Below, piece by piece: positions 36,111-57,540 of a stretch of 64,000 bases of DNA (its first letter is position 1; each line of letters starts with the position of its first letter). The position numbers and the translations under genes were made by a program. The notes below the pieces were generated by a model. The model worked only from the letters and a program-made list of their open reading frames with translations, was not told the DNA's origin and searched no databases. This DNA is from Lytechinus pictus (taxonomy: Eukaryota): positions 15,314,001 to 15,378,000 of the forward strand of contig NC_087246.1 in NCBI RefSeq assembly GCF_037042905.1, in the 5' to 3' direction.

Positions 36111-36239
36111 AGAGCAATGTGAGTTGCGATACGGCTATGCTCCTAGTGTGAAGATCAATGGACACACTGGAGCCACTTTCCCATACATCATCCAGCCCTT
36201 AGACTACATGCTTCCAGAACTTCTCAAGAATGCCATGAG
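36111..36239 (+). CDS. BCKDK: BCKDK coding exon 7
   Basis: EQCELRYGYAP...LDYMLPELLKNAMR (GHKL N box). Confidence 0.95.
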
Positions 36240-36880: not shown

Positions 36881-36970
36881 AGCAACAATTGAGAGTCACT
36901 TGGATACACCAATGAATCTACCAGATGTAATCATTACCATAGCCAGTAATGACATCGATTTCATCATTAG
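36881..36970 (+). CDS. BCKDK: BCKDK coding exon 8
   Basis: [29 protein letters not shown](R). Confidence 0.95.
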
Positions 36971-38348
36971 GTGAGTATAAATTGAAATACTGTCCTCATC
37001 TCTGTTCTATGTTGAAGTGTTATTCTCCTCATTACAGTTCATTATTTTGAAGATTAGTGAGACTCCAAGAGTAAAAAAGGCGGAAGATTTGTTGACTTAT
37101 ATTTTATCCATGTACTCTGACACGGTGACAAGCGACTGTCAATAATCCCTGTTTGAGCACAACCAAGATTTCCTCTGTGCTTGACAAAGCAGAAGACGAT
37201 TTCAGCGGTCTTTTTCTGACCATGCGCATTCTGCCATCTTGTTATGACAGAAATATGATTAAATGCAACCTAATGATAACCTCTTGCCCTGTAATGTAAA
37301 CTTAATATTTAATCTTACATTTGATGTCAACCATAGATCAGACATAGCATGTAATAAAAAGTTACAATCTTAAGATGGTTGTATCTCTTTTTAATTTTAG
37401 GGCACTGTAATATATGTACGTTGTGTTTTTGTCACATATTTCATAGGCGCAGAATGAGTTTGATTTAAGAGCATTTGAAAACATTTCCTCCCTTTTAAAA
37501 ATGGAGTGAATTTCAACTTTAATATCACTAAAATAGTTAAGTCTTACTCCATCTGGACCCAAATGGTCTTATTATACCTTTTTTGTCTCCAACCAGTTCA
37601 TGTTATGATAACTATTTGGTCTATTATGCCATTTAATCTGTTTAAAATTGTTTCATATTGCCCAAGTTGAAAACTTTGAAACAGTGCACTGGAATCTGAC
37701 CGGTGGCTGCCAGTCACTGGTGCAATATCATGCAGACCAGTCAATTAATGATAAGGGAATTCATAAGAAATGCAGAGTCAAACTCTTTGAAAATTAGTCA
37801 ATTTATAGAATTAAATTTCATAAAAGTTTCATGTGATATTATCAACTATTAAAGTGGCAGTATGGAAATAAGATTACCATGTAGGACTTCTTAAATTTCC
37901 CTGCTTGAATTTATCGGCCTGTAAAATTATGATACTGTTGCATTTGCAATGCCACATATGCTTACAACTATGATAAGTTACTACATTTCTTCACTTCTCA
38001 TCCTGAGATGACACCTATTTCTAGCGGTCCAGCGGAGTAAGTATGAGTTGCAAATAATTATAGGTGCACTCATCCATAATGCATTACATGCCAATAAGTT
38101 CAAGCAAGAAAATACATGTAGAGGAATCCTGCTTAGTAATCTTAGTTTCATACTTCTACTTGGTCTATTAAAGTTTTGACATTTAATATCATGTGAAAAT
38201 TTTAAATTATAGATGAGGAAATTTCATTTTTAAATGGGTATTTTTTCAGTCTTTGGTGACATTAAATTTTTTAATGTATTTTTTTATGTCACTGGTCCAA
38301 TTATCTGTTTGTTCTTAAAAGAGTGCAAGTGATTAATTCATTTCTATC

Positions 38349-39125
38349 AAGATGTCCCCATTATATTAGGCATTACAAGAGTTGAATGCATTCAGATCCA
38401 TCTCATCTTCTACTGCCAAGTATGATTTCTCTGTGCATTTTGGGGTTTGCAACCATTTTTGTTTCTCTGTTCAAATATTATAGAATTTGATTAACTAGTG
38501 TCTGTTACATATATGAAACGGAATCAGATTACATGAATTTTGTTGCATAGAGCTACCACCATTGATTGTGTGTATGCAGAAGGGCAACTTATGATTTCTT
38601 TCTCTAATGGGAGAAACATCTTAGCAATTCAAATATATCTGAAAATGTGTTTTGCAAGTTTTCCCAGTAATATATTCTCAATTTGTGGAAAAATTGTTAA
38701 TAAAAGAATGAAGAAAACAGAATATATATTTGTTTGTGACTTATTGGTGAGTGGATGATACTGTATTTTAATACAAATCTATGTAATGCTATTGAACTCA
38801 ACCCAGTGAACAAATTTAATTCATTTGAAAAAGATGTCGCCATTAGGTTATTACAATGAGTTGAATATATATTCTTCTACTGTCAAGTATGATTTCTTTG
38901 CATATGTTTGTGTTCTTTCGGAAGAGGAACTATGATTTTCATATTCCCTCTAAATGGAGTAACATCTTGGTAATTAAAAAAAAAATGTTTTTTGCAAGTT
39001 TTTCCAGTGATATTTTCTCTTTGATTTGAGAAATATTTGTTGATAAAACTAAAGCAAGAAGAAAATTGGAGAGTGAATTGTATATATGTACTCTGTATTA
39101 ATCAAACTAATGTTATTGAACTCCT
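38349..39125. repeat. Old diverged tandem duplication (38349-38800 / 38831-39125)
   Basis: Collinear shared blocks AGATGTC.CCATT, TCTTCTACTG.CAAGTATGATTTCT, TTTGCAAGTTTT.CCAGT, AATG.TATTGAACTC. Confidence 0.65.
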
Positions 39126-40982
39126 GAATATTCCCCAACCCAGTATTAAAGGGAATAGCCCAAGTCCAAATGGTTCAACATAAAATACATGTACACAGTT
39201 GAAACTCAGTGGCTGAAAATCTCACACAGAAGAAAAGTTTAATTGTAAGCGGTGCATATTGCTTGTTTTTGCAGACTACATGAAATATCATACATTTCCC
39301 AAATGATGCATCTATATGTATTTGGAGTGTGCATGTGTGTGGATGTGTGCATGCTTTAAAAACCTAGATTGGTGTTTAAACCTTGAAGATGTTTAGAAAT
39401 AGAATACTATGTGAAGCGCATGGACCAGGAGTACCCGGTACTACCTGCCATAACAGGATTTCATTTGATATGTTTATTTTTGTTTCTCTTCAACCATATT
39501 GTCATTTTGAATGTTGCTTGATCCAATGTTCTTGAGACTGTTAGACGGATGAATGAAAATCCAGTAAGTTCAAAACAACAAAAAACTCACTGCAAGTATA
39601 TGGGATTATCTACTGTATTTGCTTTTTATTGGAGATGTATAACATAGAACATTGATTTAGAGAACCAAAACATGATTAAGTTACTGATGCATATGAAATT
39701 AAACATTTTTAACTTTCCATAGCAAAAGTATTATGTAAAAAGCATGGTACAAAGGATATGCGTAAAAATGAACATGTTTTTATATTTTCATATGAGCAAT
39801 GTACTATAATGACAATAATCAACTTCAACTGGAATAATTCTGTACATGTGCATGCTTATGTACATTTCATATTTTGCATTAATATTTCGTTTGACATGAA
39901 TTCATTAGTAAATGTTGAATTTGATTGACTGTCTAATGGTTTTGACCTCACCTCTCTTAGTCTGTCTCTCTCTAATATTTGGCATCTTTACCTCCAGATT
40001 TACAAATTGAATATTTAAGCTGTTTAGTAAATCTTACATGTTCTAGAAGCATTTTTCATCAACGATACTGCCTTTTGAATATCTATTTCAATAATAATCA
40101 CAGAACTACAGTTTATATAAGTTATAACATAATCATTTCCATATGAAAGCATACATTTAAAATCTTCATTACTGAATTCAATATCCTTCTGTATGAATGC
40201 TACAGGGAAAGGGAACTTTCTTAAAATGAATACAAAGTGCATGCTTGTCTACAGATTATGAATCAAATCACAACATGATTGGATATTTGAGGAATATATG
40301 CAGTTGGACAATCAGAGGTTGATGTCACATGTACTGTATATCACCCACAAATTGAGTTTGAAAGTCACATTAAATTGAGCCTTGTAGAAAATGTTTAGTA
40401 AAGAAATAAAGGATTGTACAAAAGTGGAGTATAATGGAGCAAACTCACAAATTTTGACATTACATTGACTTTCATGTGTTTTGAATGTACACTCTTTTGA
40501 ATTTAAAAAGGATCATTCTCCTAACTATATCTTGAAAAGCCAAAAAATGATTCATGTCAACATGATTACACAAGCAAGTAATATGAGGTTCGAAGATGTA
40601 CCTTAAAGTTTAATTTGGGCCTCAAATTATTTGATTTTCAGAAAAACGTAACAAATTATACAATTTGTTTTCACAGGCATGTGGCCTTTATATAGCAGAT
40701 TCCTTTTTTGCCTAAATCCCCAACCTATCCCTAGTCATGGGTGGAAACCTTTCCTTTCCCTTCCTCCCCCCCCCCCCCCCGAGAAATTTCCTGATTCAAG
40801 AGTTGTCGCAGAAGTACCCCTAGGGAGGTAATGTTGTCACTCCATAGTAAAGTTTTTTGAGCTGTACTCAAAACTGAAAAATGGAAGGCTCAAGACAAAT
40901 AATATGGAGAGTGAAGTTGCCATCAGTCAGAGGTCATGTATTATTGACAATTTCAAATGAATATGTGCTGTTTAATAGTTAA

Positions 40983-41583
40983 AGGACAAGTCCACCCCAA
41001 CAAAAAGTTGATTTGAATAAAAAGAGAAAAATCCAACAAGCATAACACTGAAAATTTCATCAAAATCAGATGTAAAATGAGAAAGTTATAACATTTTAAA
41101 GTTTCGCTTAATTTCACCAAACAGTTATATGCACATACCGGTTGGTATGCAAATGAGGAGACTGATGACGTCATCCACTCACTATTTCCTTTGTATTTTA
41201 TTATATGAAATATTCAAATTTTCTCCTCATTGTCAAGTGAAACAACGATTATCCTCCCTGAACGTGTGGAATTAGCATTGTTTGATACTACACTGTATAT
41301 GGTTCAGTCAAGTTGGTCCTTATTGTCAAATCTGTAAAAAATGAAATATTGTAAAATTCAAACAATTAAAAACAAAAGAAATTGTGAGTGATGGACATCA
41401 TTGACTGACCCATTTGCATGTCACTGAGTTGCGCATATCACTGTTTTGTGAAAAATAAGCGAAACTTTAAAACGCCATTACTTTCTTACTTTACATCCGA
41501 TTTTGATGAAATTTTTAGCAATATGCTGGTTTGATTTTTGTCTATTTATTCAAATCAACATTTTCTTTGGGTGGACTTGACCT
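40983..41583. mobile_element. Kolobok-like MITE
   Basis: TTAA TSDs (40979-40982, 41584-41587); TIRs AGG(A/T)CAAGTCCACCC. Confidence 0.8.
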
Positions 41584-42110
41584 TTAAGTCCACCCCCTTC
41601 CCCTCACCAAAGAAAAATATTTGATTAAAAAAAGGAAAATTTAATTATCAAAATTGCATGTAACATATTTTTTATATAAAAAAATCATAAAATGTTAGAG
41701 TTCTGCTTCTTTGCACAAACAGTGATATGCACATCATTGTATCATTTGTATTCAATTTCAAAAATTTTTACTTAATTTTTTTTCTCTTATGACAAAAAAT
41801 ATTATCTTGAAATCTCATAGAACATGTCACATGTAAATCATCATTTCATGTGAAATTCCTCTCAAATCTTTCCAAATTAAAAATTAAAAAAAATATATTT
41901 TATATAATAAAACAAAACAAGTGGTTGTCTTCATCAGCTCCCTCATTCTCTTGACAGCTTGGATGTCAATGTCAATTTTATATGAAACTGTTTTGTAAAA
42001 ATTTGCAAAAATCTATAATGTGACAGTTTTCAATTTTGCTCAAATTTTCTGTGTAACATTCTTTATGTCTCCTTGCATAATCAATAATCCAGGTTAAATC
42101 AAAATTCTGT

Positions 42111-42409
42111 GGCCCATATTCTAAAATCTGGTTTAAATTAGGCCATGGTCTAACATTGTGCTAAAATTATGGGAAGCCCACAATATTAAAATTGCATTTA
42201 TGTTACGTTTCATATCTTTACTTGGCTCTTTTCTCATGTTATAGTGAAGAGAACAATTTCAGTAATTATTCAGTCAGTAAAATGTATGAATAACTTGTGT
42301 CAAATGAGCTGACAAATTGTACTGTTCAATGTACTTCTCACAACTGGCTATCCATAGCGAAACCACATAGACCAGAGTGTGAATTAAGCCCAAGTTCAGA
42401 ATGCTGGCC
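42111..42409. mobile_element. Degenerate MITE
   Basis: Imperfect TIRs GGCCCATATTCT / AGAATGCTGGCC. Confidence 0.4.
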
Positions 42410-43112
42410 AAGGTGTTCAGAAACCATGGTACAAATAAGTGCTTGGAAATCAAATTAATGCAGAATACAATGAAATATTTCAAAAAGTCAAAGTCAAAAA
42501 AGGTAAGCATCAACAGGACAAAGGCTAATCAAGATCAATTATAGATTTAACTTTTATACCTACTATCTACTTCTCACATTTTTAAACTGGTAATTGACTG
42601 CAGTCTCTGTGTTACAGGGCCTAGGGGTAAGTATTGGAAAGTAAATATTGCAAAAAGTTCTGTTAATACCCAGAACATATATGGTTATGATCGAAATGTT
42701 CACATACACCTATTCTGTGGGAAGAACAATATTTTACTCAAATTTCCATTTTAAGAAGAGTTGAGTCTCTGAATGATTAGTGACACACACTTGGACATTC
42801 ATAGTCCAACATTCCAAAAGCAATCAAGAGGGATAAACAGTTACATTCATTAGTTTTCTTTTTTTAATCGGTTGTATAATCTTTTGGACCAAACTGTAAG
42901 TAACTTTTCAACATACATAATTATATAATACTCAAGTATATAGTCCTCTGGAGCTGTTTCATGCGGCTGTTTGTAGACTTATAACTTAAAAGCTGTATGA
43001 GTGTCTGGAATATGGCAAGCCAAATGTGGGCCTCAACATGCAGATGTTGAATGAGATTTTACCGTTAAAACACATTTTCATGGAAAGTACAGTTTTGCTG
43101 AAATACAATTGA

Positions 43113-43224
43113 AACGGGCAGATCCAGGATTTTGCAAAAGGGGGGGGGGGGGACACATTTTCCTGAGAAAAAATTTGACAAGCAAGCAAAAAAAGGCTTT
43201 GCCGCCCCCCTGGATCTGCCAGTG
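43113..43224. mobile_element. Short MITE
   Basis: GGCAGATCCAGG / CCTGGATCTGCC inverted ends. Confidence 0.55.
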
Positions 43225-43665
43225 AATTGAAATTATTTAAAGTTAAAGTAATTTTTTTTTTATATGTCATGATTCATTAAGCTTAGGTTCATATTTTGAC
43301 TTTTCATGTTCCAGTCTGTCATACATGTACATGTCATGTGATACTTTAAGAAACAACCCTTGACATTACACATGTTCAAAGCACATGGAAACATACGATT
43401 CATTTGAGGCCCTACATGTATGTCAGGGATAACATAGGCTAGGAAAATATTTACTGATATTAAATTGTGTTGGGACAGGTTTTTTTTCAAAGAAATCACA
43501 CAATTACTACTAGGCCATGATTATAAACGGAGGTTTCATATTATGCAGTGTCTACAATGAAGTATTAAAAAACATCAGCCAATGAGATTAACTTTCCTGA
43601 TGTTCAAATATAAGGTACACATGCTCTCTTGAATATAGAGTCCACAAAAAAATCCAGGATGCTCT

Positions 43666-45801
43666 TCATTCTTGGGATGTACTGGACAGTCCTCCTTGAG
43701 CTCCATCTACATTGGATGTCCCAAGTTCATGAGCAGGCACCCCTGTACTATCATCTTGCATGGGATAGAACAAAGCTGCAGATGTATCAGCAAGTGTGGC
43801 TTTCTTTGGCGTACGCTTGCGCCTCGACTGCTTGGACTTTGAGTCCTTCTTATCACTCTTGTCACCTTTCTTTTCACTCTTTGGTGACTTTGATTTTACC
43901 TTCTTAAATTTGACCTTGAGAGGCGAGTTGCTGTTGCGATCGGGACTCTTTCTCTTCTTTCCTGTCATCATCTGCGCTGATACCAGCTGCTTGGCAAGAT
44001 TCTTCTTGAACTCCAAGGTGCACATCTTGCGTGTACCAGACAGAGAGCCATGGTTTGCATTCATGTAGGTCTCCTTCATAATGATATATGCGTTGGCCAT
44101 ACATGTGTCAAAGATGAACCAGAATAGATAGTGCCACCATTTGTTGGAGGTGCGAGAGGAAGGATACTCAAGACGAAGCTGGTTGGCGTGTGATACACCA
44201 TGAAGATATTTGTTACAGTTAGACATTGCTTGGGGACAAGGGACTGGCTTTACCCAGCCATCTCGCTGTTTCCTGGTCACATTGTCAGTTACTGTAGCAT
44301 CATCTGCTGTTGACAGCACATGAACAACTCGCTTGTCTTTCCAAGCATATGCGCAGGTATTGCCCTTCTGAACAACTGCGGATTGACCATGTTGTGTAAA
44401 AGACTTGGACCCAAGCTGAGCCTCTGGAAAATCCTTGCGGTCAGCTTTGACAGTTCCCCGTCCCCTGATTCCCAGGTCAAATAGTCTCTCCAGGAGATAA
44501 GGACTACAGAAGAATCCTTTCATGTTAATTATGGCATTAGAATTATGGAGATCCTTGGTGAGATCTAGCACCACTCTTGCTGCTAACCCACCTTCCATTT
44601 TTCCTGCCTGTGACTTGCCAGTATAGAATTGAAAGTCATTCACATAACCATTAGTGGAATCGGCTCTCATCCACACTTTGATCCCTACTGTTGAACCATC
44701 AGCTGATCTCTGCCGCCAACCTAACTTGCCTTTGTAAGTAATTATAGTTTCATCAATACACAAGTTCTGGTGTGGATTGTACGATTCTTTGATAGTGTGT
44801 AGAACTGTGTCCAGAACTGGGCGAATGGCATGAAGTTTATCATGATCTGGAGCAGTCACAGGCGGGTTTGTGGTCATGTCATTAGCACTAAAGTTCCTTG
44901 CTATGTTCTGAAAGCGATTCTTAGGCATGATCTGCGAACAAGCCAGGTTACCAAAGAGCCAATCAGTGGACCAGTACATATCTTGATGAGGGAGGCTAAG
45001 AATGCTCATATAGATGCGAATACCAAGATAAGCTTTCATTTCTGTCAGAGTCAGTGGTTGCCAATGCGCATTGGCTTTATCACCTTGGCTTTGTTCTGCA
45101 AAGCGATTAGTCTCTATCATTAATTGCTCAATGAGTGACTCAGGGAATAGCAAGTTAAAGTAGTCCAGCTCTGGTGTACCAGGTGGAAACAATATCCCCG
45201 GTCCTGGCTGGACAGCATTGAATGGTGGGGGTGGAGTAGCTCTGACTTGATGAGTCCAACCAGATGGCTGATTGGCTTGCTCATTCCTTCCCTTGTGTGC
45301 AGAGGAAGCTGTAGAAGTCGGTGCTCCGACTGTGGAAGCAGGCGGCGGAGGTTGGCCACGAGGAGGCATCTGGAGACCATGAAATGGCATGTGGGAAGCA
45401 CCTTGGGAACCCATGTCAGCAGCCTGCCTTGCTGCTTGTTGGGCAGCCTGCTGCACCAATCCCAGTCCTATGCTCTGGGCAAAAGCTTGCTGGATCATAG
45501 TAGAATTAAACATCTCCCTCCTGCTACCATCTAAGTTTGTGTATGTCTTCTCAATGTCCGATCCACCGCCTTCAGATTGTTCATCAACACTGATGTCATC
45601 GGAGTCTATATCTGAACAGTCAAAAGGGACAGGAGGATGCATCATAGAGCCAGTTCCACCCATGTTGCCTCCCATGTCTGGTCCCATGTTGTGCTGCATG
45701 TTGGGGGGTACATTTTGCATACCACCAGGCATGCCCCCTTGACCCTGGCCTCCCCTGGTAGTATCATAAACACCACCTGCCAACTGCTGAATATTCGCCA
45801 T
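43666..45801 (-). CDS. piggyBac transposase-derived protein (PGBD4-like DDE_Tnp_1_7 fold), ~711 aa, catalytically degenerate, nested antisense in a BCKDK intron
   Basis: Uninterrupted ORF with piggyBac motifs YFNLLF..IETNRFA, W.PLT..EMKAYLG, DKLHAIRP, LCIDET, GIKVW, GTVKADRK, WKDKRVV.VLST, KWWHYLF. Acceptor polypyrimidine-TACAG|G lies immediately before the ATG at 45801. Confidence 0.92.
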   Translation of the reverse strand: MANIQQLAGGVYDTTRGGQGQGGMPGGMQNVPPNMQHNMGPDMGGNMGGTGSMMHPPVPFDCSDIDSDDISVDEQSEGGGSDIEKTYTNLDGSRREMFNSTMIQQAFAQSIGLGLVQQAAQQAARQAADMGSQGASHMPFHGLQMPPRGQPPPPASTVGAPTSTASSAHKGRNEQANQPSGWTHQVRATPPPPFNAVQPGPGILFPPGTPELDYFNLLFPESLIEQLMIETNRFAEQSQGDKANAHWQPLTLTEMKAYLGIRIYMSILSLPHQDMYWSTDWLFGNLACSQIMPKNRFQNIARNFSANDMTTNPPVTAPDHDKLHAIRPVLDTVLHTIKESYNPHQNLCIDETIITYKGKLGWRQRSADGSTVGIKVWMRADSTNGYVNDFQFYTGKSQAGKMEGGLAARVVLDLTKDLHNSNAIINMKGFFCSPYLLERLFDLGIRGRGTVKADRKDFPEAQLGSKSFTQHGQSAVVQKGNTCAYAWKDKRVVHVLSTADDATVTDNVTRKQRDGWVKPVPCPQAMSNCNKYLHGVSHANQLRLEYPSSRTSNKWWHYLFWFIFDTCMANAYIIMKETYMNANHGSLSGTRKMCTLEFKKNLAKQLVSAQMMTGKKRKSPDRNSNSPLKVKFKKVKSKSPKSEKKGDKSDKKDSKSKQSRRKRTPKKATLADTSAALFYPMQDDSTGVPAHELGTSNVDGAQGGLSSTSQE

Positions 45802-47662
45802 CCTGTACATGGAGAAATAAAAAGTATAACTTTTTAAAATTATTTCCATTCATTTTTCCGGGTTTATCTATTTGAATATTATCATTTGCTGAATTCCCCC
45901 GTGAATATTTAAATTTGAAATATCTCTAATTCTTTTATTCTGCAGAACAAAAGTAATGGAATTGAGCCATATAATTTATCTTACTGTGGAAAGTGTTTGT
46001 TTCTTGTCCAGCAGAAGTGCCTCTTATTATTTTGGGGGTCAGGTACATGTAGAGTGGTAGACCTTACCTAACTGAGCAATACCACTTATGACATCAAGGT
46101 GCAATGGTTGAAAAACGCTTTGACAAATTGTGACCTCCCAAAATGGTATTGGAATAATTTCATTGAAATGTCTTGAAAACACCCATATTTTAAAAAATTA
46201 TCCCGGACTGTGGAATATGAATGAATGCACAGACCAGTTTTGAATGTATCCAGGACCGACACAAAGCGTTTTATAGTTGATTTATAGTTGGATCAGTTTT
46301 CAAATTGATTGTAGTAATCATTCTGACATTCTTTAAAAAATAATGATATCTACATGTATTTCCCGCCCAATCTCCCTCCTGGCCTGAATTATTTAGCATT
46401 AAATTGGGTTGGAGTATAAAATTCAAATTTTATTCTTATCATTTTGTTTTGTATAAGGTTTTTTTTTTTTTTTTTAAGGAGTTAAGCGGGAGAAAGTTTG
46501 AACAGAGTAAGAAAAATAGTAGAAATATGTGCATATAAAAGTTGCACTCTTTACCTAGAGCTATGGAAATTTCAAATTAGCCGCATAGGCCAATGGGACT
46601 TTAGGTAGCAACCCCTTAATTTGCTCCAATACACTAATTGACAAATATACATGTACGGTATATATATATATTTTTTTTTACAAACGTTTTTTTTATTGGC
46701 AGAATCATGTTTTACTAAGACTCTAGAGCACTGAAAAATATATCCGTAGATACATGTTTGTTAGACCCAACCTATTCCTACAATGTATGGCCCTGCATCA
46801 TCTGCATGGAAAGCAGGGGGTGCTGTATAAAAAAAGCTGCACATGGCCATAGTGAAGGCAGCATCCCCTGGATGTTGTTGGCCATTTGTATATGCTAATT
46901 TGACCAAAATCAGGGAATAATTTTGCTTTACAAAGTTGAATAGCATTTTTTGTCATATGAGAAAAGCTCTCAACTAGCTAGGTAATGTACATGTACTACA
47001 GTCCTGTAAAAATATGCTTGCTATGTAAGACTTTATGCATAGCAGTACCGGTAGTCTAAAAAAGTGGAGCAAATTGCGATGCGATACCAGGAAAATTATT
47101 CCTTGAAAATCAACTTATTTTTGGAGCAAACCCCCCCCCCCTTTTTTTTTTTTTTTTTACTTGCTTGTCCATTTTTTTCTGAATGATGAATCTGACCAAA
47201 GGCAAAGAAAAGTCAAGAGTAAAGTCCAAACAAAAAAAGCAACTTCATTTTTAATTTTAGAGTGAAAACTTATTTTGGCCAAATTTGGGGCTTTGTCCCA
47301 GGCTAACCCCACCCCCCCCCCCCAACATTCAGTGAAGTCTGTACTACTTTATAAGACAAATGAACGTGATCGCGACCCTGACATGCATGTCCATGGTCCA
47401 TGACCATAGCCATCGATGGCATGAGGAGTCACGTACGCCCAGCCTTCGTCCCAATTGAACGTATGGGACTACATCATAAACTTACAGCATCTCTACACCA
47501 GAATACACGTAGATAATTACATGCACGGAGTCGGAGTCGTGAGGGTTAAACTCCCTGGTATAAAACTGATTTGTCTTTCTTTACTTGTAATCTTTTCATG
47601 ACTTACAAGGCATTGATTACGGGGAAATACTAGGGCTTAAACATATTATTTAATATTCTTAC

Positions 47663-47780
47663 CTGAAGGATATGCGAAGGGTTAAAAAGTGTAATTTGTG
47701 GCATCCACATTCAGTTTCCGCTGAAGTCTATCACCGCCATTGCCTTGGCTCAGCTAGCCCATTATAGCTTAGGCGTACCG
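47663..47780 (-). promoter_or_regulatory. Putative promoter and non-coding leader exon of the piggyBac-derived gene
   Basis: CAG|GTAAGA donor at 47663, YY1-like CCGCCAT (47734-47740), local CpG enrichment. No in-frame ATG after splicing to 45802. Confidence 0.5.
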
Positions 47781-48788
47781 CCGGTACGTACGTATTATGC
47801 ATTATTTGCAGACACGGAAAACACTGCACAAACTTTGTGTATGCATAAACTCAGATCATCGTGTACACACGTACATGTACCAGTACCAGGGACTTTAATC
47901 TTTATTGTTGTCCATTCTGCAGGCCAGGCGGAGCGGTTTTGTAAGTGTGGGGGGGGGGGGGGGGGGGGCTGACCATGCAAAAAATCATAATCAGGGTCAG
48001 TTTTACGTTTTTATACACAGTTTTGGAAAAAAAAGTGCGGGGCCCCCGTAGCCCCCCCCCCCCCGTTTCCGCGGCCCCAGTTTAGGTGTGCACTGTTTAG
48101 GCAAGCAGGGTAGAGCTGATAAGGATTTGGGGGCCAGGCTTTTTTCTGACATTCAGGCATAACATAGGGGGGAAGCGGAGGGGGTCTATTTCTTAGAAAG
48201 ACCCCTATCGCCGCCAGGAAAAACTCCCAAAAGGCATTACTTTGATTAAGATAAAAGGGAACATGGTGTATCCCTTCCCTACCCCTGGGCAAATGAAAAA
48301 AAAGTGTTTTTTGTACATTATATTCAGACTTACTGTAATATTTAACTACATTCGAATACTCCAAAGAATATTTATTTTATGAATTGTTTCAAATAGACCA
48401 GTTTATTATTTTATTAAATGATATGCGTCATTGGCCCGAAAGAAATATTATTCTAGACAAAATGGGGTTAAAATAGGCCTTGAGTGATTCTCCGACAAGA
48501 ATGTAATGCATGCAAAAAACAGGAATGAAAATTTAGTGGCCGCGGTGGGGTGGATCTAGTGACCATAAATCGACTATATAGTGTATGTCCTGCGTTTGGT
48601 GGAGCTATTTATTACATTTATTTATTCATGGACTTGGAATGTTTGTGATTTGAAAAAAAAAAAACATGTTGCGTTTTCAGGTCTACCTGAAATGGTGCAC
48701 CAAGTCAAAAGAACGAACAACTCACTATTGCAAAAAAAAAAAAACGAAAATTTAGTGTATAAAACGAGGATTAAACTCACCAGACAAG

Positions 48789-50321
48789 CAGTGGCGTAAC
48801 AGGCGGGGGGGGGGGCAGGGGGGGCAAGCTGCCCCCCCTGGCGGAGCTCACCGGGAAAATAAAAAAAAACGGGAAAAAGAAAAAAAAAGGGGGGGAAGAA
48901 AGGGAAAGGGAAAGGAAAGAAAAAAGGGGGAAGGGAAAGGAAAAGGGAAAAGAAAACTAAGAAAAAACATAAAAAAGGGAAAACGGAAAGATAACGGGAA
49001 AAGGAAGGAAAAAGAACAAGTGACAAAGAACAATTCGCCCCGATATATAAATACATTAGCATGATTAGTAAGACAGGGAAATAAATTAAAGATGACAAAA
49101 AGGCAAACAAAAGCGGGAAAAAAAGGCAGAATGGAATTAGCCAAAATCTAAATTGGAAAATAAAGAATAGGGACAAGATAACGTACACTACCGGGCTGCC
49201 GAGGATTGAGATAACGAGCGGGAAGAAAAATGGATGGTATATAGCATAATGTCGTATGAAAGTCTATCATAAACTTGCTAAATCTCCAAAGGCTCTGTCC
49301 AAGAGTCAAGACCCCGTGCAGTGGGGGCTCTTCATCTGTAACCTTCAATGGGTTCTATAACGGGCCCCTATATGGACCCTTCCTGCATTAAGCTTTACGT
49401 TGAAGCACTGGCGTACCGGGTGTGGTTCCACAGCCAATGGGAAATAAAAGAAAGGAGGCAGCGAAATGAGATGAATGAAAAAAAATATATGACATGATAT
49501 TTGCTATAATGATGTAAAAATCTATCACATAATTAGAATTTCATTTTAACAGGCCTTTTTTTTCTGGCTCGCTTCGCTCGCTGGCAACTTTTTACAAATT
49601 TTCCCACATTTGCTATGGTGTGCACCTCACAATATTTGGATGATTACGATACACAACTGCATTGAATTTATGTGTTGTGTTAAAGCTATATAAATATACA
49701 CGCAATTTGATTAAAATAAGTGGCCATCTATAAGGTTTAAAATGGCTTTGAAATCAAGAGGTTCCGGGGCTCTGCCCTGGACCCCACCCATAAAGCACTG
49801 TTATATGGATGAGTTTGGACCCTGGCCCCAAAAGTTCTACAACCAAACAAACAAAATGAGGAAAGAAAGGAAAGTGTATTATATTTTTCTGAATATCACG
49901 TTTAAAATCTATCTTCATGTTAGATTCTCATGAAAATGTGATTTTTTTTTATCTCGCTCGCTTCGCTCGCTCGGGACCTATATTAAGCTACTCCTTGCCA
50001 AAAGCGCCATACTCGGCCCCCTCAAGCATATAGAGCTTCGCCCTGATGCTGACAATCATAAGTTCATAACAAAAATCCTGTTCACCGTGGCGTACAAAAA
50101 AAGAAAGAAAAAAGGAAAGAGAGGAGGGTGAATATGATATCATCTTTTTAACATTATGTCAAAATCTATCACAAAATTTGATTTTTTTCGCTTATTTGCC
50201 CGATACGCCATATCGCCCCCTCAAAATTGTTGCCTTATGACGCCATTGCCTGTTCAATGATATGACCGGGAAATTTTTGGCTCTTGCCCCCCCCTGGCCA
50301 CCGACCCCTGTTACGCCGCTG
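48789..50321. mobile_element. Non-autonomous hAT-like element
   Basis: TIRs CAG(T/C)GGCGTAACAGG with a perfect 8-bp TSD CAGACAAG (48781-48788, 50322-50329); internal A/G-rich tract. Confidence 0.85.
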
Positions 50322-50690
50322 CAGACAAGGAAATTTCAAGTAACACAGGTGCTGATCGATAAATGATCACTATACTTGCGTTCTTTCCATTTCTTTGAAT
50401 AAGATTTTCAACATCTGGGATACCATTCAAGGAAGTTAAACATACTACCGAAACTTTTTTTTTCCCTTTTTTTTTCTAAGTGAATAAGATGACTATAATC
50501 GGGTTTAAATTAATCTTTTGTTTAGGCTTGCATATACCAGAGATGCACTTGAGATTTCATGACCATGCAATCAAATCCAACTTTGGATAGCTGCAAATAA
50601 TTATGTCCAGCAAACTGGTGGGGTCGATCAGCGGCCACAGCTCTTTTGTTGACGGCGGGGGAAATACAAAAGGAGGAAGAATAATTGTAA

Positions 50691-50691
<1 letters not shown>

Positions 50692-50733
<42 letters not shown>

Positions 50734-50830
50734 CAGTTCTTGTATAGCGCATATCACGATTATGAATAATGTCTCTATGCGCTTGCAAAGGACTTGGATA
50801 TTATTACCCCAGCTGTAGCTTGGCAGCCGT
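50692..50830 (-). mobile_element. SINE/LINE 3' tail with (AAT)n microsatellite
   Basis: About 13 AAT units followed by TATAGCGC...ATTATTACCCCAGCT, related to the 28 kb SINE tails. Confidence 0.55.
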
Positions 50831-52937
50831 AATTACTAAGATTAAGATTACTAATAATAATAGTAATGATAATAATAATAAGAAGGAGAGGAGGAGGAAA
50901 TGTAGAGAAGAGAAATAAAAGAGAAAGAGGAGAAAAAGAAAATTAAAAGGAGAAATAAAATGGAAAAAAATACATATTCAGGGGAAGCGATGGCTAATGC
51001 GAGCATGAGAGCAATTTACGGGTGACAGGTCAATAATTATTTATCGATATCAAAATTTCGCTCGCACTACACACCCTGCTCAGCTCAAATGATTTTTTGA
51101 TCTTGCAAAATGCAAATATTACTTTATTCCCTCATTTAAACATTCCATTAAATTCCAGTTTTTAGATCTAAATATTACTCAATTTCTGTTGGTGTTTCGC
51201 GCTCGCATTCTTTGTTTTGTGAGATTGGTATTATGTAAAATAATGATCCTTTAAAAAAATGACCCTTTATAAAAGGCTTGCGCTTCGCTCGCATTTTTGT
51301 TAGATGAATCTACGCACCGTGATTGAAAATTTGCTTTTAATGCCCCGTTTTCAGGTTTGAAGAGTTAATAAGCAATTTAAACCAAAAAGTTTAATGAATA
51401 AAATTGTTTCTTCTTATCCAGATATGCGAATGTAGAAAACGGATAATATTCATCCCGATGACAAAATCTCAAGTCTTCCAGGTGATCGATGATGACGTTA
51501 GAGCGTTCCTTCCATTTCTCTGAATAAGATTTCCAGTATACATGGTATAGCCTCATTCATGGAAGTTATGCCTTATCATCAACATTACGAAACTGAAAAG
51601 TTATTTTCTCTCAGTGTTTTATATGTTCAGTTCGGAACTTTCAGTTCAGGACATGATGATTATAATCCATGCACTCGCATTATTTGTATAAGATGCGAAC
51701 CCTGTTTGTGAATTTGTACAAGTAGTCCTAATAATTATGTTACTTAAAAAAAAAAAAAAAATCAGTTTCTACTTCGTACTTGCAATATTTATTTATTGTG
51801 AAACCAAAGGTGTTTATATAGAGCGTCCATTTTTTCAGGAGCACCAATGTGTAAATAATCAGCAGAATCCTAGCATATACGGTTTTGTGACCATCATGAT
51901 ACTTCGAAAACCGAGAACGTTCGCAGAAATCATAAAAGGAATTATGTGTTATCAGACATACTACCGAAAATGAAAAAAGGGGTTCCTTTTGTTTTGAACT
52001 AGATTAATAATCCATGCATTCGCATTATTTGTTTAGTGTGATACGGTTCATGAATTCGGGTTAAATGATCCCTTTCCATGTTTTTTCAGTTAATTGTCTA
52101 ATTTGAATGCTCACGGTGATATACAGAAGGGGCTCACAGAATTTTCCTTTTGATTAAGTCAGGATATGAATATATTTGAGGTTGCGCTTCATGCTCCAAT
52201 TATTTGTTTATTGGCTGTTTCTCTAGCTGGTTACGTGTCTTGTTCATGAATTCCAACTAAGTCCTTAAAATGTCACCTTTTCAGGGAAGAATAACAAAAG
52301 AATGATTGAATTGAATTGAATTGAATGTATTTATTGTCCTGTGTAGTAAATTCATTTCACATCGGATTTACAAAATTACAAATACATATGCACATAGACA
52401 GAATGAAATAGACTTACAATACCGTGGGATTACATACACAAACAAAATGCCGTATACGTTATTTCAAATATAATAGAAAAAAGTACAATTGCAGATGTAT
52501 AAATTGATTAATTGTTCAAATATTAATTGGTTTGTGATTCCATCTCCAGCCCGAATACGGGGGGGGGGGGTGGAACGAGTATTGCGAGACTTTAAATTAA
52601 AGGTGAGTATTAAAAGGGGCGGGGTTCACAGTAAGCTAAGTGCAATTCCCCATTCTATCTGACAACTGTACTATTAAACACATGTTGAGAATTGAAATGA
52701 CTGCCTAAAACGTACTCTGTTAGTACGGGAGACACAGAGGCGAACACCAGACCTATTGAAGTTGTAATATCAGTGTAGAGGGTGAGATGGATCTTTTAAG
52801 ATAGCCTCAACTTTAGCCAGTAATCTCTCGTTGTACAGAGTTTCAATTGGGGGTAATTCAAGACCGATTATTTTCTGGGCAATTTTCCGTGGGCGTGTTG
52901 TTCGATTTAGTGATGCGCTCGTATATGATTACGTTTA

Positions 52938-54297
52938 CACTCTGAATTCCAAGGATTTACGTAGAATTGATCCAGATCGGCTGTGGACAGTGACCGGCCG
53001 AATTTTGAATTTATTTTAAATCTTAAGGATTAACTTATAAATCTCTAAAGACTTTAATTCAAATCTTTTAGATTTATATTCAAATCAACAAGGTTTAAAT
53101 CTAAATCTATATTCGGCTGGTCACTATTCACAGCCGATCTGGATTTAAACCCCTGAAAAAAAAATTGGAAATCTGTGTTTTTTTCATTAATTTCTCCCAA
53201 CTCCCAATTTTACACAATGCGTGTTTTACATCATTCAAAAATCATATAATTTTCTTTAAAATGATACCATGCTTGTTATGATCATGCCATCACGAAAAGA
53301 GCAAGCTTCAAAAGTGTTGGATGAGGTCTGAATTGAAAAGCTGCAAAACAAGCAAAAAAAAGTTTGGAAATCTGAGTTTGGCCATTAATTTCTCCCAACT
53401 CCCAATTTGACACAATGCATATCTTCCATCATTCAAAAGATCATTTAATTTTCTTTAAAATGATACCATGCTTGTTATGATAATGCCATCACGAAAAGAG
53501 CAGGATTCAAAAGTGTTGGATGAGGTCTGAATTGAAAAGCTGCAAAACGAGCAGAAACAGTCATGAAGGGTCAATACAGAACATGATTCTTTTGTCTGTG
53601 TCAATAGACATGATAGAGATGAAAATCCATTCAAATCAAGTCCCTGCTTCTGTAGTGATGGTTCTGTGAGATAACATGGTTTGAGTCGTGGTTTGAAATA
53701 CCCCATGCATGTTTGTTTGTTTGTAGTATGTGTTTGCTTGGGCAGAGGTGTGTTTGACTCCATGTTAATGTTGATGTTAAGGTGCATGAAAACAATTAAA
53801 AGAAACCGCTGAGAAACTCATCACCACTGAAAAAAGAACAGTGACTTTCAATAATGTGTCATTTTTCAACTTTTGAATTTTGACCTTGCCCCACATTTCA
53901 AGGCATGCATTGCACCTCCATGTGAACCATAATCATATCATGTAGGGTATCATTTTAAAGAGAATTAAATGCTCTATTCATTGATATTAATTATACATTG
54001 ATATTTACTAAAATCGAGGAGGAATCATCGATCAAAGTAAAAACAAACCGCTGAGAAACTCATCACCACGGAAAAAGAACAGTGACTCTCAATATTGTGT
54101 CATTTTGCGACTTTCAATATTGTGTCATTTTGCAACTTTTGAATTTTGACCTTACCCCACATTTCAAGGCACTATATACACCTCCATGTGAACCATAATC
54201 ATATCATGTAGGGTATCATTTTAAAGAGAATTAAATGCTCTATTCATTTCCAAACTTTTTTGGAGGAGTTTATTTTAAATCCTTGGAATTTAGAGTG
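52938..54297. mobile_element. Non-autonomous DNA transposon with CAC termini (EnSpm/CMC-like); contains two internal tandem duplications
   Basis: TIRs CACTCT(G/A)AATTCCAAGGATTTA with TA flanks. Duplications at ~53165/53365 and ~53803/54045. Confidence 0.7.
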
Positions 54298-54789
54298 TAG
54301 TGAAATAAGACTTATTTCACTTCGAGAAGCCGATCATTAATTTTTTAAGGAAAATTTTCCGCCCTCCATGTTTGACAGTCCCAGCCTCCGCCTCTGGAGA
54401 ATACTGTTAGCTGTATACCACAGTCCTCTATACTTATAAGATGAAACATTCAACAAATCTCCCTTCTATCTGTATGGTGCGAATGTACCGACCCTCTTTG
54501 TAACTTTTTCTTTTTTTCCCCCGTTAAAGTTGCATTTTAGTTTTCATTATTCAGTAGAATGAATCTTAGCCACCCCTCCGAAACCAAAAAACACTTTGTT
54601 TTATGATATAATGCGGTTGTGGAGCAATCAAGCTGAAAGTGTTAATGCTGGAATAGAAACTAAACTTGAAAATTGAATGAATTTCAAGTAATGAAATCTA
54701 TACGTCATTCTAGGTCATCAAAGCTAAGTTATTTGATGTACAACATCAAAAACCTTAATCAGAATGAAGATTTTTTTTCATGTCATTTT

Positions 54790-56105
54790 TGTCTCGCCTG
54801 GGCGCCGCTTTTCCAACGGCGGCGGCGGCGTCGTCAACATTGAAATCTTAACTAAGGTTGATTTTTGTCTCGCCTGCGTAGAAGAGCGGGACTATAGTCG
54901 CCGCTATTCTGACGGTGGCCGCGGAGGCGGCGGCGTCGTCAACATTGGTTGAGTTTTTGAACTGTCAGTAGAAAGTATATAGACCTAGTTCATGAAACTT
55001 TGAAATAAGGGTAATCAATCACAGTGACTGACCACCTTGCATGAGTTTCATGTTACATGGCCAAGGTCAGAGATCATTTAGGATCAATGAACTTTGACCA
55101 TGTTGGGGATATCAACATTGAAATCTTAACCAAGGTTAATTTTTTTGTCTCGCCTGTATAGCAGAGCGAGACTATAGGCGCCGCTTTTCCGACGGCGGCG
55201 GCGGTGTCAACATCAAATCATAAACGGAGGTTAAGTTTTTGAAATGTCATCATAACTGAGAAAGTATATGGGCCTAGTTCATGAAACTTGGACATAAGGG
55301 TAATTAAGTATTACTGAACACCCTGCCTGAGTTTCAGATCACATGACCAAGGTCAAAGGTCATTTAGGGTCAATGAACTAGGACCATGTTGGGGAATCAA
55401 CATCAAAATCGTAACCGAAGGTTAAGTTTTTGAAATGCCATCATAACTTAGAAAGTATATGGGCCTCGTTCATGAAACTTTGACATAAGGGTAATCAATT
55501 ATAACTGAACACAATGTCTGAGTTTCAGATCACATGACCAAGGTCAAATGTCATTTAGGGTCAATGAACTTAGATTATGTTAGGGGAATCAAAATCTTAA
55601 GCAAGGTTAAGTTTTTTTAAATATCCTAACTCTGAAATTTAGGGTCATTGAACTTTGGCCATGTTTGTGGTATTTGTTGATTTCCATCATAACTTTGACA
55701 GTTTATGGATCTGGTTCATGAAACTTGGACATAAGAGTAATCAAGTATCACTGAACATCCTTTGTGAGTTTCAGGTCCCATGACCTAGGTCAATGAACTT
55801 TGGCCGTGTTGGGGGTATTTGTTGAATTGCCATCATAACTTTGAAAGTTTACTACTAGTTCATAAAATGTGGATATAAGGGTAATCAAGTATCACTGATT
55901 GTCTTGCACAAGTCTTTGGTCACATGATCAAGGTCAAATGTCATTTAGGGTCAGTGAACATAGTAATTTATCATCATATATGGTGTTTTTTGTAAATGAT
56001 TATTCGTAAATTCGATTATTCGTAAATATATAGTCGTTTTCAAAGTCAGCACTGCTGCTATATTAAATCGCGTAATGCATGCGAGACTGCCAGAGGCTCC
56101 TCTTG
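54790..56105 (+). mobile_element. HINE family A cluster with three 5' ends and one 3' end
   Basis: T-run|GTCTCGCCTG at ~54791, ~54867 and ~55147; single 3' end GCGAGACTGCCAGAGGCTCCTCTTG. Confidence 0.75.
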
Positions 56106-56174
56106 TTTTGAAATATGCTAACTTTTAATGCAAATGGATTTACATGATTGTTATTATCATATCAGTGATGTTTT

Positions 56175-56395
56175 TGTCTCACCCATCGGAGGTGAAGGCA
56201 AGACTAAAGAGATCCAAATGTCGTCCGTCTGTCACAAACATTACGACAGATAACTTTGCAACCGTAAGTCACTTTCAACCAAACTTGGGTTGTAGATGCA
56301 TTTATGTTATGGTGCAATCGGAGGTCACATGGTAAGGTCATTTCAGGTCAAACGTTAAAGGTCACGTGTAAGATTCTCTTGTGACACATAACTCT
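56175..56395 (+). mobile_element. 5' fragment of a further HINE-like family
   Basis: T-run|GTCTCACC start, GTCCGTCTGTC microrepeat and AGGTCA-rich unit. Confidence 0.45.
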
Positions 56396-56574
56396 GATAT
56401 CCACTCTCCACATAACTCTGATATCCACTCTCTCCAGAGAGTGGCTTTAGCTTTGGTTTGCTTTTTTTAAACCAAATCTTATTGAGTATTGGTCTACAGT
56501 ACTGGCATTGGTAGAAAACTAGAAATCAAACAATTATTTATATCACCCAATTACATTTTTATCTCCCATCCCAG

Positions 56575-56736
56575 GATATCAGATCGAGGAGGAGGTATCC
56601 CTCATTCCATGTTGAAGAAGGTGTTTCAGTATCACTTCACTACAGCTAATGATGATGAGAGTGTGAGTGATAATGGTGGAGCATTCGGTACTTTGATGGA
56701 AGCCGTTAATCAGACTACAGCTGGGCCTCTCTGCGG
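56575..56736 (+). CDS. BCKDK: BCKDK coding exon 9
   Basis: ISDRGGGI (G1 box) ... YHFTTA ... GPLCG. Confidence 0.95.
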
Positions 56737-57380: not shown

Positions 57381-57540
57381 TTTGTTTGGCATCTTCTGTG
57401 CGTGGAAGGCAAAAAAGCGACCTGAATGACTGTGACCCACGAGTCTCTCTTCCTGATGTGCAGTAGTACATATTTGTCATGTACAAGGAGATGAGTCATA
57501 ATTTAATTAGAATTACCATATTCTATGTTATTCTCTTCAG

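What the first reader, a model, noticed from the sequence alone, without database searches (positions are those of the whole stretch)
36971..56574. PGBD-like gene nested antisense inside the one giant BCKDK intron
Seen: this intron is 19.6 kb whereas the other coding introns are 0.4-5.7 kb. It separates the GHKL N box from the G1 box and holds a complete opposite-strand transcription unit (leader exon ~47663, coding exon from 45802). Inference: the insertion was fixed in place and may now interact with BCKDK by transcriptional interference or shared regulation, linking a transposon-derived protein to control of branched-chain amino acid catabolism.
Basis: partly seen in the sequence, partly recalled or inferred. 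Interest (0 to 1): 0.7.

Follow-up and report, generated by a model that had tools for sequence, protein, structure and literature searches.

The report
Tamed piggyBac gene inside urchin BCKDK
A sea urchin metabolic kinase gene (BCKDK) carries, inside its largest intron and on the opposite strand, an expressed, catalytically dead transposase-derived gene that has sat in that same intron across distantly related urchins, but nothing shows that the two genes regulate each other.

Summary
BCKDK lies on the + strand and its intron 36971-56574 is 19,604 bp with GT..AG ends, against about 0.4-5.7 kb for the other coding introns. On the minus strand the intron holds a 711-codon piggyBac-derived gene (CDS 45801-43666).

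- **Expression:** stranded RNA-seq shows a minus-strand, spliced transcript. The leader exon ends at 47663 and a 1,860-nt intron joins it to 45802.
- **Not a live transposon:** the gene is single-copy in this genome and I found no terminal inverted repeats. It has no Cys-rich C-terminal domain. The catalytic DDD(D) reads D-K-S-N.
- **Selection:** dN/dS is 0.07 overall and 0.04 in the transposase core.
- **Conserved nesting:** orthologues (87-99% core identity) sit antisense in the same BCKDK intron in Lytechinus variegatus, Strongylocentrotus purpuratus and Diadema setosum.

So this is an old, domesticated transposase gene, apparently restricted to echinoids. NCBI names it "PGBD5-like". Its structure, catalytic pattern and nearest relatives argue against orthology with chordate PGBD5.

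The transcription unit lies at least 4.5 kb from either flanking exon, and conserved nesting is what passive inheritance predicts. It is a new member of known kinds (domesticated piggyBac gene, nested antisense gene) and of moderate interest.

The parts
36111..36239 (+). BCKDK exon carrying the GHKL N box (..PELLKNAMR)
   Evidence: Acceptor AG at 36109-10 and donor GT at 36240-41 read. PDB BCKDK chains hit at E 1.3e-15.
36881..36970 (+). BCKDK exon just before the giant intron (..[30 protein letters not shown])
   Evidence: Splice sites read. The exon is conserved in L. variegatus, S. purpuratus and Diadema.
36971..56574 (+). Giant BCKDK intron, 19,604 bp, GT..AG, phase 2
   Evidence: The same intron is about 12.3 kb in S. 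purpuratus, about 16.5 kb in Diadema and over 20.6 kb in L. variegatus.
56575..56736 (+). BCKDK exon starting with the G1 box (ISDRGGGI..)
   Evidence: Pfam HATPase_c match. The 3' boundary is inferred from GGGTGAGT.
57540..57685 (+). Last BCKDK coding exon (G2 box FGFGLP.. to the stop). The start coordinate is approximate.
   Evidence: BLAST match to Diadema covers 57538-57684.
43666..45801 (-). Coding sequence of the piggyBac-derived gene: 711 codons plus stop, in a single coding exon
   Evidence: ORF. Pfam DDE_Tnp_1_7 at 2.6e-72. RNA depth 5-18x, all from the minus strand. dN/dS 0.07.
45803..47662 (-). Intron of the nested gene, 1,860 nt, GT..AG on the minus strand
   Evidence: Splice sites read. 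The joint 45801|47662 is seen in 5 + 18 reads and in contigs of runs X1 and X15. No uniquely placed reads cover it: bins 45849-46833 are at zero, and the only coverage is two-stranded repeat signal at 46834-47227.
47663..47736 (-). Non-coding leader exon. The 3' end is exact. The 5' end is not mapped, and thin read coverage runs to about 48.2 kb.
   Evidence: The X1 contig reaches 47736. Positions 47656-47724 are 85.5% identical to S. purpuratus.
42453..43665 (-). 3' UTR of the nested gene. The end is approximate, and one contig runs on to about 41.5 kb.
   Evidence: Minus-strand RNA reads, plus contig X15 record 8 and X1 record 1. No clear AATAAA signal near 42450.

Best explanation
A piggyBac transposon inserted antisense into the intron between BCKDK exons 8 and 9 in an ancestor of living euechinoid sea urchins, at the latest before Diadema and the camarodont urchins split. 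It was then domesticated.

It lost its terminal repeats, its Cys-rich C-terminal domain and three of the four catalytic aspartates, giving the pattern D-K-S-N. It gained its own promoter and a non-coding leader exon 1.86 kb upstream. It has since evolved as a single-copy host gene under strong purifying selection.

It is transcribed and spliced independently of BCKDK, from the opposite strand.

Inferred, not shown: the protein keeps the transposase core fold (the core aligns to piggyBac residues 130-515) and carries a Lys-rich, NLS-like tail. It most likely acts as a non-catalytic nuclear DNA- or chromatin-binding or scaffolding factor.

The nesting is a frozen accident. Once a gene sits deep in an intron, it is inherited with it. 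The intron is large because it houses a transcription unit of at least about 5.3 kb plus later repeats, not because the two genes are functionally coupled.
For: Intron and exons:
- Boundaries read directly.

piggyBac origin:
- Pfam DDE_Tnp_1_7, 244.5 bits.
- Alignment to piggyBat 9c0f (9e-29) and piggyBac 6x67 (2.5e-19). The positions of D346 and D447 are occupied by K and S, and D450 by N.

Domestication:
- Single copy in the 812-Mb genome. The next best match is 36% identical.
- No TIRs found and no zf-Tnp_2 domain.
- dN/dS is 0.071 between Lytechinus and Strongylocentrotus, and 0.037 in the core. dS is saturated against Diadema, while core dN is only 0.05.
- The D-K-S-N pattern occurs only in the 5 echinoid sequences. 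Of 178 nearest relatives, 126 are DDDD.
- In the tree the echinoid clade has 100% support, a long stem (1.2) and very short internal branches. It is nested among bivalve and limpet DDDD elements.
- Among listed variants in the RNA-seq reads and assembled contigs, 8 are synonymous against 2 single plus 1 double non-synonymous. None of the non-synonymous changes is in the core.

Expression:
- Strand-specific reads cover the CDS.
- The splice joint appears in 23 reads and in contigs from two more studies.

Conserved nesting:
- The same intron holds the gene in S. purpuratus, D. setosum and L. variegatus.
Against: - No functional data exist for the protein. The non-catalytic DNA- or chromatin-binding role is inferred only from retained domains and lost residues.
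- Alternative catalytic residues, as once proposed for PGBD5, cannot be excluded from sequence.
- Lack of coupling to BCKDK is argued from geometry and parsimony. It was not measured, and BCKDK exon coverage and co-expression were not examined.
- The age is bounded only by the species available here. The BCKDK locus of cidaroids and of other echinoderm classes could not be fetched.
Confidence: 0.8

Rival explanations
1. The nested gene and BCKDK are functionally coupled. Antisense transcription through the intron, or shared regulatory elements, tunes BCKDK elongation, splicing or level, and selection keeps the nest for that reason.
For: - The nest has been kept in the same intron and orientation across deep echinoid divergence.
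- The nested gene is actively transcribed against the direction of BCKDK.
Against: - Conserved nesting is the default outcome for any intronic gene, so it does not discriminate.
- There is no exon overlap. The unit is at least 4.5 kb from exon 8 and about 8.4 kb or more from exon 9, so the mature mRNAs cannot pair.
- Apart from the CDS and the leader exon, BLAST recovers almost no intron sequence between Lytechinus and Strongylocentrotus.
- Intron length varies from 12.3 kb to over 20.6 kb between species.
- No expression comparison was made.
Confidence: 0.08
2. The gene is the missing echinoderm orthologue of chordate PGBD5, as its NCBI name suggests. That would move PGBD5 domestication back to the deuterostome ancestor.
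For: - NCBI names the S. purpuratus, L. variegatus and D. setosum proteins PGBD5 or PGBD5-like.
- Like PGBD5, it lacks 3 of the 4 catalytic aspartates and the C-terminal zinc-finger domain.
Against: - PGBD5 has 5-7 coding introns and lacks the first three aspartates (PMC5381638 Table 1). This gene has one coding exon, keeps the first aspartate and reads D-K-S-N.
- PGBD5 synteny is EFCAB2-HNRNPU-EGLN1 (PMC3902484), not BCKDK.
- Both papers report no PGBD5 in echinoderms.
- In an exhaustive profile search, the 150 best clusters are mostly DDDD transposon proteins. The two that lack D1-D3 are a scorpion protein and an unnamed short contig.
- The tree nests the echinoid clade among mollusc elements.
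Confidence: 0.05
3. It is an ordinary, possibly still mobile or recently decayed piggyBac copy, or an assembly artefact, that happens to lie in this intron.
For: - The genome holds dozens of piggyBac-like ORFs (39 matches).
- The intron is repeat-rich.
Against: - The gene is single-copy, and the nearest paralogue is 36% identical.
- Orthologues lie at the same site in four assemblies.
- dN/dS is 0.07.
- Catalytic residues are lost in all orthologues.
- The mRNA is spliced.
Confidence: 0.01

Closest known systems
Chordate PGBD5 (domesticated piggyBac transposase; Pavelitz et al. 2013, PMC3902484)
   Same: - Ancient, single-copy gene derived from a piggyBac transposase and under purifying selection.
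- Canonical catalytic aspartates mostly lost.
- C-terminal Cys-rich domain lost.
- The N-terminal part is weakly conserved and lies outside the Pfam domain.
   Different: - One coding exon plus a 5' leader exon, against 5-7 coding introns.
- Catalytic pattern D-K-S-N (first aspartate kept), against loss of the first three.
- Located inside BCKDK, not next to HNRNPU/EGLN1.
- Nearest relatives are mollusc DDDD elements.
- The literature reports no echinoderm PGBD5. Most likely an independent domestication.
CSB-PGBD3 (primate piggyBac inserted in an intron of ERCC6/CSB)
   Same: A piggyBac element fixed inside an intron of a conserved host gene and retained as a coding sequence.
   Different: - PGBD3 lies in the sense orientation and is spliced to the upstream CSB exons, giving a fusion protein driven by the host promoter.
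- Here the gene is antisense, with its own promoter and leader exon. No fusion with BCKDK is possible.
Nested (intronic, opposite-strand) gene pairs of metazoan genomes
   Same: The whole transcription unit lies inside one intron of a host gene, on the opposite strand. It has its own promoter, and the arrangement is conserved among related species.
   Different: The nested gene is transposase-derived, so the way the nest arose (transposition into the intron) is evident. The arrangement is otherwise typical.
Active piggyBac / piggyBat transposases (PDB 6x67, 9c0f)
   Same: The same core is present: DDE_Tnp_1_7, aligning over piggyBac residues 130-515. By my recollection of the piggyBac structure, that span covers the dimerisation/DNA-binding, RNase-H-like and insertion domains.
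   Different: - No DDD triad.
- No Cys-rich domain.
- No TIRs or TTAA ends.
- Single copy.

Membership tests
piggyBac transposase superfamily (protein fold) | Pfam DDE_Tnp_1_7 (PF13843) match above the gathering score | tested here: met
   244.5 bits against a cut-off of 22.4, residues 229-588 of the 727-aa ORF. PDB piggyBat at 9e-29.
Active piggyBac-like transposon (PBLE) | Catalytic DDD(D) aspartates (piggyBac D268, D346, D447, D450) | tested here: not met
   The pattern is D-K-S-N in all five echinoid orthologues. Of 178 nearest relatives, 126 are DDDD.
Active piggyBac-like transposon (PBLE) | C-terminal Cys-rich domain (zf-Tnp_2, PF13842) | tested here: not met
   No Pfam hit. The C-terminus is Lys/Ser-rich without Cys clusters.
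Active piggyBac-like transposon (PBLE) | Terminal inverted repeats with TTAA target duplication, and multiple copies | tested here: not met
   No flanking TIR pair in 41000-49500 by a simple seed-and-extend search. Single copy, with the next best match at 36% identity.
Domesticated transposase gene | Orthologues at the same genomic site in distant species | tested here: met
   The same BCKDK intron holds the gene in L. variegatus, S. purpuratus and D. setosum.
Domesticated transposase gene | Purifying selection on the coding sequence | tested here: met
   dN/dS is 0.071 overall and 0.037 in the core. Variants in reads and contigs are 8 synonymous against 3 non-synonymous, none of the latter in the core.
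Domesticated transposase gene | Expression as a host-type mRNA | tested here: met
   Strand-specific coverage and a GT..AG splice from a leader exon, seen in 23 reads and in contigs from 2 further studies.
Chordate PGBD5 orthologous group | Transposase domain split by 5-7 conserved introns | tested here: not met
   The CDS is one uninterrupted exon. The PGBD5 structure is taken from PMC3902484 and PMC5381638.
Chordate PGBD5 orthologous group | Loss of the first three catalytic aspartates | tested here: not met
   The first aspartate is retained (CIDET). The pattern is D-K-S-N, against '_ _ _ D/N' in PMC5381638 Table 1.
Chordate PGBD5 orthologous group | Synteny with EFCAB2 / HNRNPU / EGLN1 | tested here: inconclusive
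   The gene lies inside BCKDK. Other agents' notes place PTGR1 and KDM2 as neighbours. The wider chromosome was not scanned for the PGBD5 neighbours.
Chordate PGBD5 orthologous group | Groups with PGBD5 in a tree | not testable with these tools
   No lancelet or vertebrate PGBD5 sequence could be obtained by reference. As far as pattern and names could tell, none is among the top 150 exhaustive hits.
BCKDK (mitochondrial branched-chain ketoacid dehydrogenase kinase) | BCDHK_Adom3 plus HATPase_c domains, with BCKDK rather than PDK as the best solved relative | tested here: met
   Pfam hits on individual exons. The only PDB hits at E <= 0.01 are BCKDK chains. The orthologous genes are annotated with both domains.
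Regulatory sense-antisense pair (transcriptional interference or dsRNA) | Overlap of the antisense transcript with host exons or promoter | tested here: not met
   The transcript spans about 41.5/42.45-47.8 kb, with thin coverage to 48.2 kb. The nearest BCKDK exons end at 36970 and start at 56575.
Regulatory sense-antisense pair (transcriptional interference or dsRNA) | Correlated or anticorrelated expression, or an effect of perturbing one gene on the other | not tested
No BCKDK exon coverage was obtained.

The most novel reading that the evidence does not exclude
The nest is kept by selection. Antisense transcription of the domesticated transposase gene through the exon 8-9 intron modulates BCKDK elongation, splicing or level. 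That would tie a transposon-derived gene to control of branched-chain amino acid catabolism in sea urchins.
Probability: 0.08. Interest if true: 0.6.

Novelty: new member of a known kind. Interest (0 to 1): 0.38.

Why it matters
This adds a well-supported, independent and old domestication of a piggyBac transposase. It appears restricted to echinoids, is at least as old as the split between Diadema and the camarodont urchins, and has a distinctive D-K-S-N active-site remnant.

Echinoderms are a phylum for which the two papers read here report no PGBD5. The automatic name "PGBD5-like" is therefore probably misleading.

The gene is also a clean example of how a transposon insertion creates a lasting nested gene pair. 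The Lytechinus urchins are genetically tractable, so the function of the protein, and any effect of the nest on BCKDK, could be tested directly.

The link to branched-chain amino acid catabolism itself is currently only a positional coincidence.

Tried and rejected
- **TIR search:** an inverted-repeat search of 41000-49500 found only pairs made by dispersed repeats or homopolymer runs. None flanks the gene.
- **Rfam:** a scan of the whole intron found nothing.
- **ESM Atlas:** the look-alike search returned only generic piggyBac clusters. A first attempt failed because of my own frame error.
- **Other dead relatives:** two other catalytically degenerate relatives were checked for BCKDK exons around them, and none was found. 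These were P0050 (pattern NGTD) and P0024 (pattern HDAD), so they are unrelated loci.
- **P0004:** this is the most basal echinoid-type orthologue (87% core identity). Its contig could not be read because the sample file is too large, so its species and its nesting are unknown.
- **Other echinoderm classes:** I could not fetch BCKDK loci of sea stars, sea cucumbers, brittle stars, crinoids or hemichordates. No spliced BCKDK protein was available by reference, and the genome collections on hand are microbial. The insertion is therefore dated only by a lower bound.
- **PGBD5 in the tree:** I could not add chordate PGBD5 to the tree, for the same reason.
- **Own-genome paralogues:** my ORF extraction for them failed, and they were dropped or sat on a long branch. 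Their placement should be ignored.
- **3' end of the transcript:** no clear poly(A) signal was found near the apparent 3' end at about 42450.
Full report
**What is at the coordinates**

The window is sea urchin DNA (G000 contig 2, an 812-Mb assembly). The nested protein is 98% identical to its Lytechinus variegatus orthologue over the searched region, residues 190-640. Another agent's note names the species as Lytechinus pictus; I did not verify that.

On the + strand lies a BCKDK gene.
- Exon pieces hit Pfam BCDHK_Adom3 and HATPase_c.
- The N-box exon hits only BCKDK chains in the PDB, at E 1.3e-15.

The intron named in the finding is exact.
- The exon ends at 36970 (..NDIDFIIR) and is followed by GTGAGT.
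- The acceptor AG is at 56573-56574, followed by the exon that starts ISDRGGGI.
- The intron is 19,604 bp and phase 2.

The other coding introns are about 1.0, 1.0, 5.7, 0.7, 1.25, 0.37, 0.64 and 0.8 kb. These sizes are approximate where I did not read both splice sites.

One detail needs correcting. The N box (ELLKNAMR) is in exon 36111-36239. A further small intron and exon 36881-36970 also lie between the N box and the G1 box.

**The nested gene**

The minus strand carries a 727-codon ORF at 43666-45849. The real start is the ATG at 45801, directly after the acceptor AG at 45804-45803. That gives 711 codons beginning MANIQQ, as in the S. purpuratus and Diadema proteins. A donor GT lies at 47662-47661, so the leader exon ends at 47663.

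The protein matches Pfam DDE_Tnp_1_7 at 2.6e-72. It aligns to piggyBat (9c0f, 9e-29) and to piggyBac (6x67, 2.5e-19) over piggyBac residues 130-515.

In those alignments the first catalytic aspartate is kept (CIDET). The second is Lys (NMKGFF), the third is Ser and the fourth is Asn (HGVSHANQ). No zf-Tnp_2 domain is present, and the C-terminus is a Lys/Ser-rich tail.

**Is it transcribed?**

I laid two rRNA-depleted, paired RNA-seq runs of the same species (raw reads), plus contigs of two older runs, on 42500-48400.
- The unique bins over 43485-45848 have depth of about 5-18. Almost every read pair has its first mate on the + strand. In the usual stranded libraries that means the RNA is from the minus strand.
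- Depth is zero from 45849 to 46833.
- A joint from 45801 to 47662, skipping 1,860 nt, has CT..AC ends on the + strand. That equals GT..AG on the minus strand.
- The joint is seen in 5 + 18 reads with many distinct starts, and in one contig each of runs X1 and X15, which come from two further studies.
- Coverage continues 3' of the stop codon to about 42.45 kb. One contig runs on to about 41.5 kb.
- The 5' end of the leader exon is not mapped. A contig reaches 47736, and thin coverage runs to about 48.2 kb.
- Two short stretches (about 43.09-43.29 kb and 46.83-47.23 kb) show high coverage from both strands. These are dispersed repeats.
- No + strand (BCKDK-sense) reads were seen in the unique intronic bins.

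The antisense transcription unit is therefore real, spliced and has its own 5' exon.

**Transposon or gene?**

In the animal's own genome the protein matches itself at 100%. The next best of 39 piggyBac-like matches is only 36% identical. No inverted-repeat pair flanks the unit.

Orthologues exist in several echinoids:

| Species | Core identity |
|---|---|
| L. variegatus | 99% |
| S. purpuratus | 95% |
| Diadema setosum | 91% |
| Unnamed ENA contig (P0004) | 87% |

Selection on the coding sequence is strong.
- Pairwise Nei-Gojobori dN/dS between Lytechinus and Strongylocentrotus is 0.071 overall. It is 0.037 in the core, 0.074 in the N-terminal part and about 0.20 in the tail.
- Against Diadema, dS is saturated while core dN is only about 0.05.

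The variants listed in the RNA-seq reads and in the older runs' contigs point the same way. Eight are synonymous. Two single changes and one double change are non-synonymous, and none of these lies in the transposase core.

An exhaustive profile search of 1.84 billion cluster representatives found only the echinoid cluster matching at full length (1,621 bits). The next hit scores 435 bits and covers only the transposase core. None of the best 150 hits reaches into the first ~120 residues.

Among 178 nearest relatives, 126 have DDDD at the four catalytic positions. D-K-S-N occurs only in the five echinoid sequences.

A quick maximum-likelihood tree gives three results.
- The echinoid clade has 100% SH-aLRT support.
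- It has a long stem (1.2 changes per site) and very short internal branches.
- It is nested in a supported group (99) whose members with names come from bivalves (Dreissena, Mytilus and clam-derived contigs) and limpets (Patella), mostly with DDDD.

This is the signature of one domestication followed by long constraint.

**Is the nesting conserved?**

In S. purpuratus, D. setosum and L. variegatus the annotated BCKDK gene spans the orthologue on the opposite strand. tblastn with the window's exon peptides shows that it is the same intron in all three. The exon ending ..DFIIR lies on one side and the exon starting ISDRGGG on the other.

| Species | Length of the host intron |
|---|---|
| This window | 19.6 kb |
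| S. purpuratus | about 12.3 kb |
| Diadema | about 16.5 kb |
| L. variegatus | over 20.6 kb (the far exon is beyond the fetched locus) |

Diadematoids and camarodonts are generally taken to have split more than about 200 million years ago. That figure is from my own knowledge, not computed here. The saturated dS is consistent with it.

Between Lytechinus and Strongylocentrotus, BLAST recovers very little of the intron outside the CDS. What remains is a 69-nt block of the leader exon (85.5% identical) and two short blocks near 39.6-40.25 kb.

**Relation to PGBD5**

NCBI names the orthologues "PGBD5(-like)". Pavelitz et al. 2013 (PMC3902484) and Bouallègue et al. 2017 (PMC5381638) both report that PGBD5 is absent from echinoderms. 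They describe chordate PGBD5 as follows:
- 5-7 coding introns;
- loss of the first three catalytic aspartates;
- synteny with EFCAB2, HNRNPU and EGLN1.

The urchin gene has one coding exon, keeps the first aspartate and lies in BCKDK. Its nearest relatives are DDDD transposon proteins rather than a large vertebrate cluster. I therefore read it as an independent domestication.

I could not place a real PGBD5 sequence in the tree, so I leave about 5% for deep orthology. Three full-text searches found no paper describing this urchin gene or its position in BCKDK.

The first part, "fixed in place", is supported. The second part, interaction with BCKDK by transcriptional interference or shared regulation, has no evidence behind it.
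- The nested unit overlaps no BCKDK exon. It lies at least 4.5 kb from exon 8 and about 8.4 kb or more from exon 9.
- Because the gene is antisense, it cannot be spliced to BCKDK. This differs from the CSB-PGBD3 fusion.
- Conserved nesting is what passive inheritance predicts.
- The one test that would bear on coupling is expression correlation or perturbation, and I could not run it.

I put coupling at about 8%.

**Verdict**

The feature is an old, expressed, catalytically degenerate piggyBac-derived gene. It is known so far only from echinoids and is frozen antisense in the largest BCKDK intron.

It is a new member of two known kinds: domesticated piggyBac genes and nested antisense genes. 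It is already present in automatic annotation, under a probably misleading name. I found no description of it in the searchable literature.

Noticed in passing
window 43091-43287 and 46834-47227: Two short stretches, one in the 3' UTR and one in the intron of the nested gene, attract very high coverage from both strands. Contig word depth reaches hundreds to thousands, with many loose ends. They share a 29-nt inverted match (43166-43194 / 47152-47180). They look like copies of a dispersed SINE- or MITE-like repeat.
   Followed up: partly
window 47663-47760 (minus strand): The leader exon contains upstream ATGs. One opens a 9-codon uORF. Another is out of frame and, after splicing, would run past the main ATG at 45801. 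Whether they lie downstream of the transcription start is not known.
   Followed up: no
L013 10001-12103 (L. variegatus) against window 45801: The annotated L. variegatus protein (P0001, 700 aa) starts MILPGG.. instead of the MANIQQ.. start shared by the window, S. purpuratus and Diadema. This is probably an annotation difference at the 5' splice or start codon, not a real difference.
   Followed up: no
window 45600-45400 (protein residues ~57-130): The N-terminal part lies outside the Pfam domain but contains a block that is almost invariant in all five echinoid orthologues (PVPFDCSDIDSDDISVD.. to ..AFAQSIGLGLV). None of the 150 best hits of the exhaustive search reaches into it. Its function is unknown. 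It includes an acidic Ser/Asp run that resembles casein-kinase-2 sites.
   Followed up: partly
window 30576-31013 (+), in the 5.7-kb BCKDK intron: A 145-codon ORF resembles the C-terminal part of a non-LTR retrotransposon reverse transcriptase. This is judged by eye from motifs such as ..HLDYCNALLAGLP..; it was not searched.
   Followed up: no
window 53156-53557 and 54834-55937: Tandem arrays with periods of 144-286 bp lie in the distal part of the giant intron. The 54.8-56.0 kb arrays have many partial matches in the L. variegatus locus. They add to intron length.
   Followed up: partly
window 45328-45329: All RNA reads of both runs read AG where the assembly has GA. This changes codon 158 from Val to Ala. 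It is probably a polymorphism or a local assembly error.
   Followed up: partly
L014 5182-6531 (P0050) and L017 10001-11743 (P0024): Two other piggyBac-derived ORFs from unnamed eukaryotic contigs are intact but have degenerate catalytic positions (NGTD and HDAD). They could be further domestications. They are not linked to BCKDK.
   Followed up: partly
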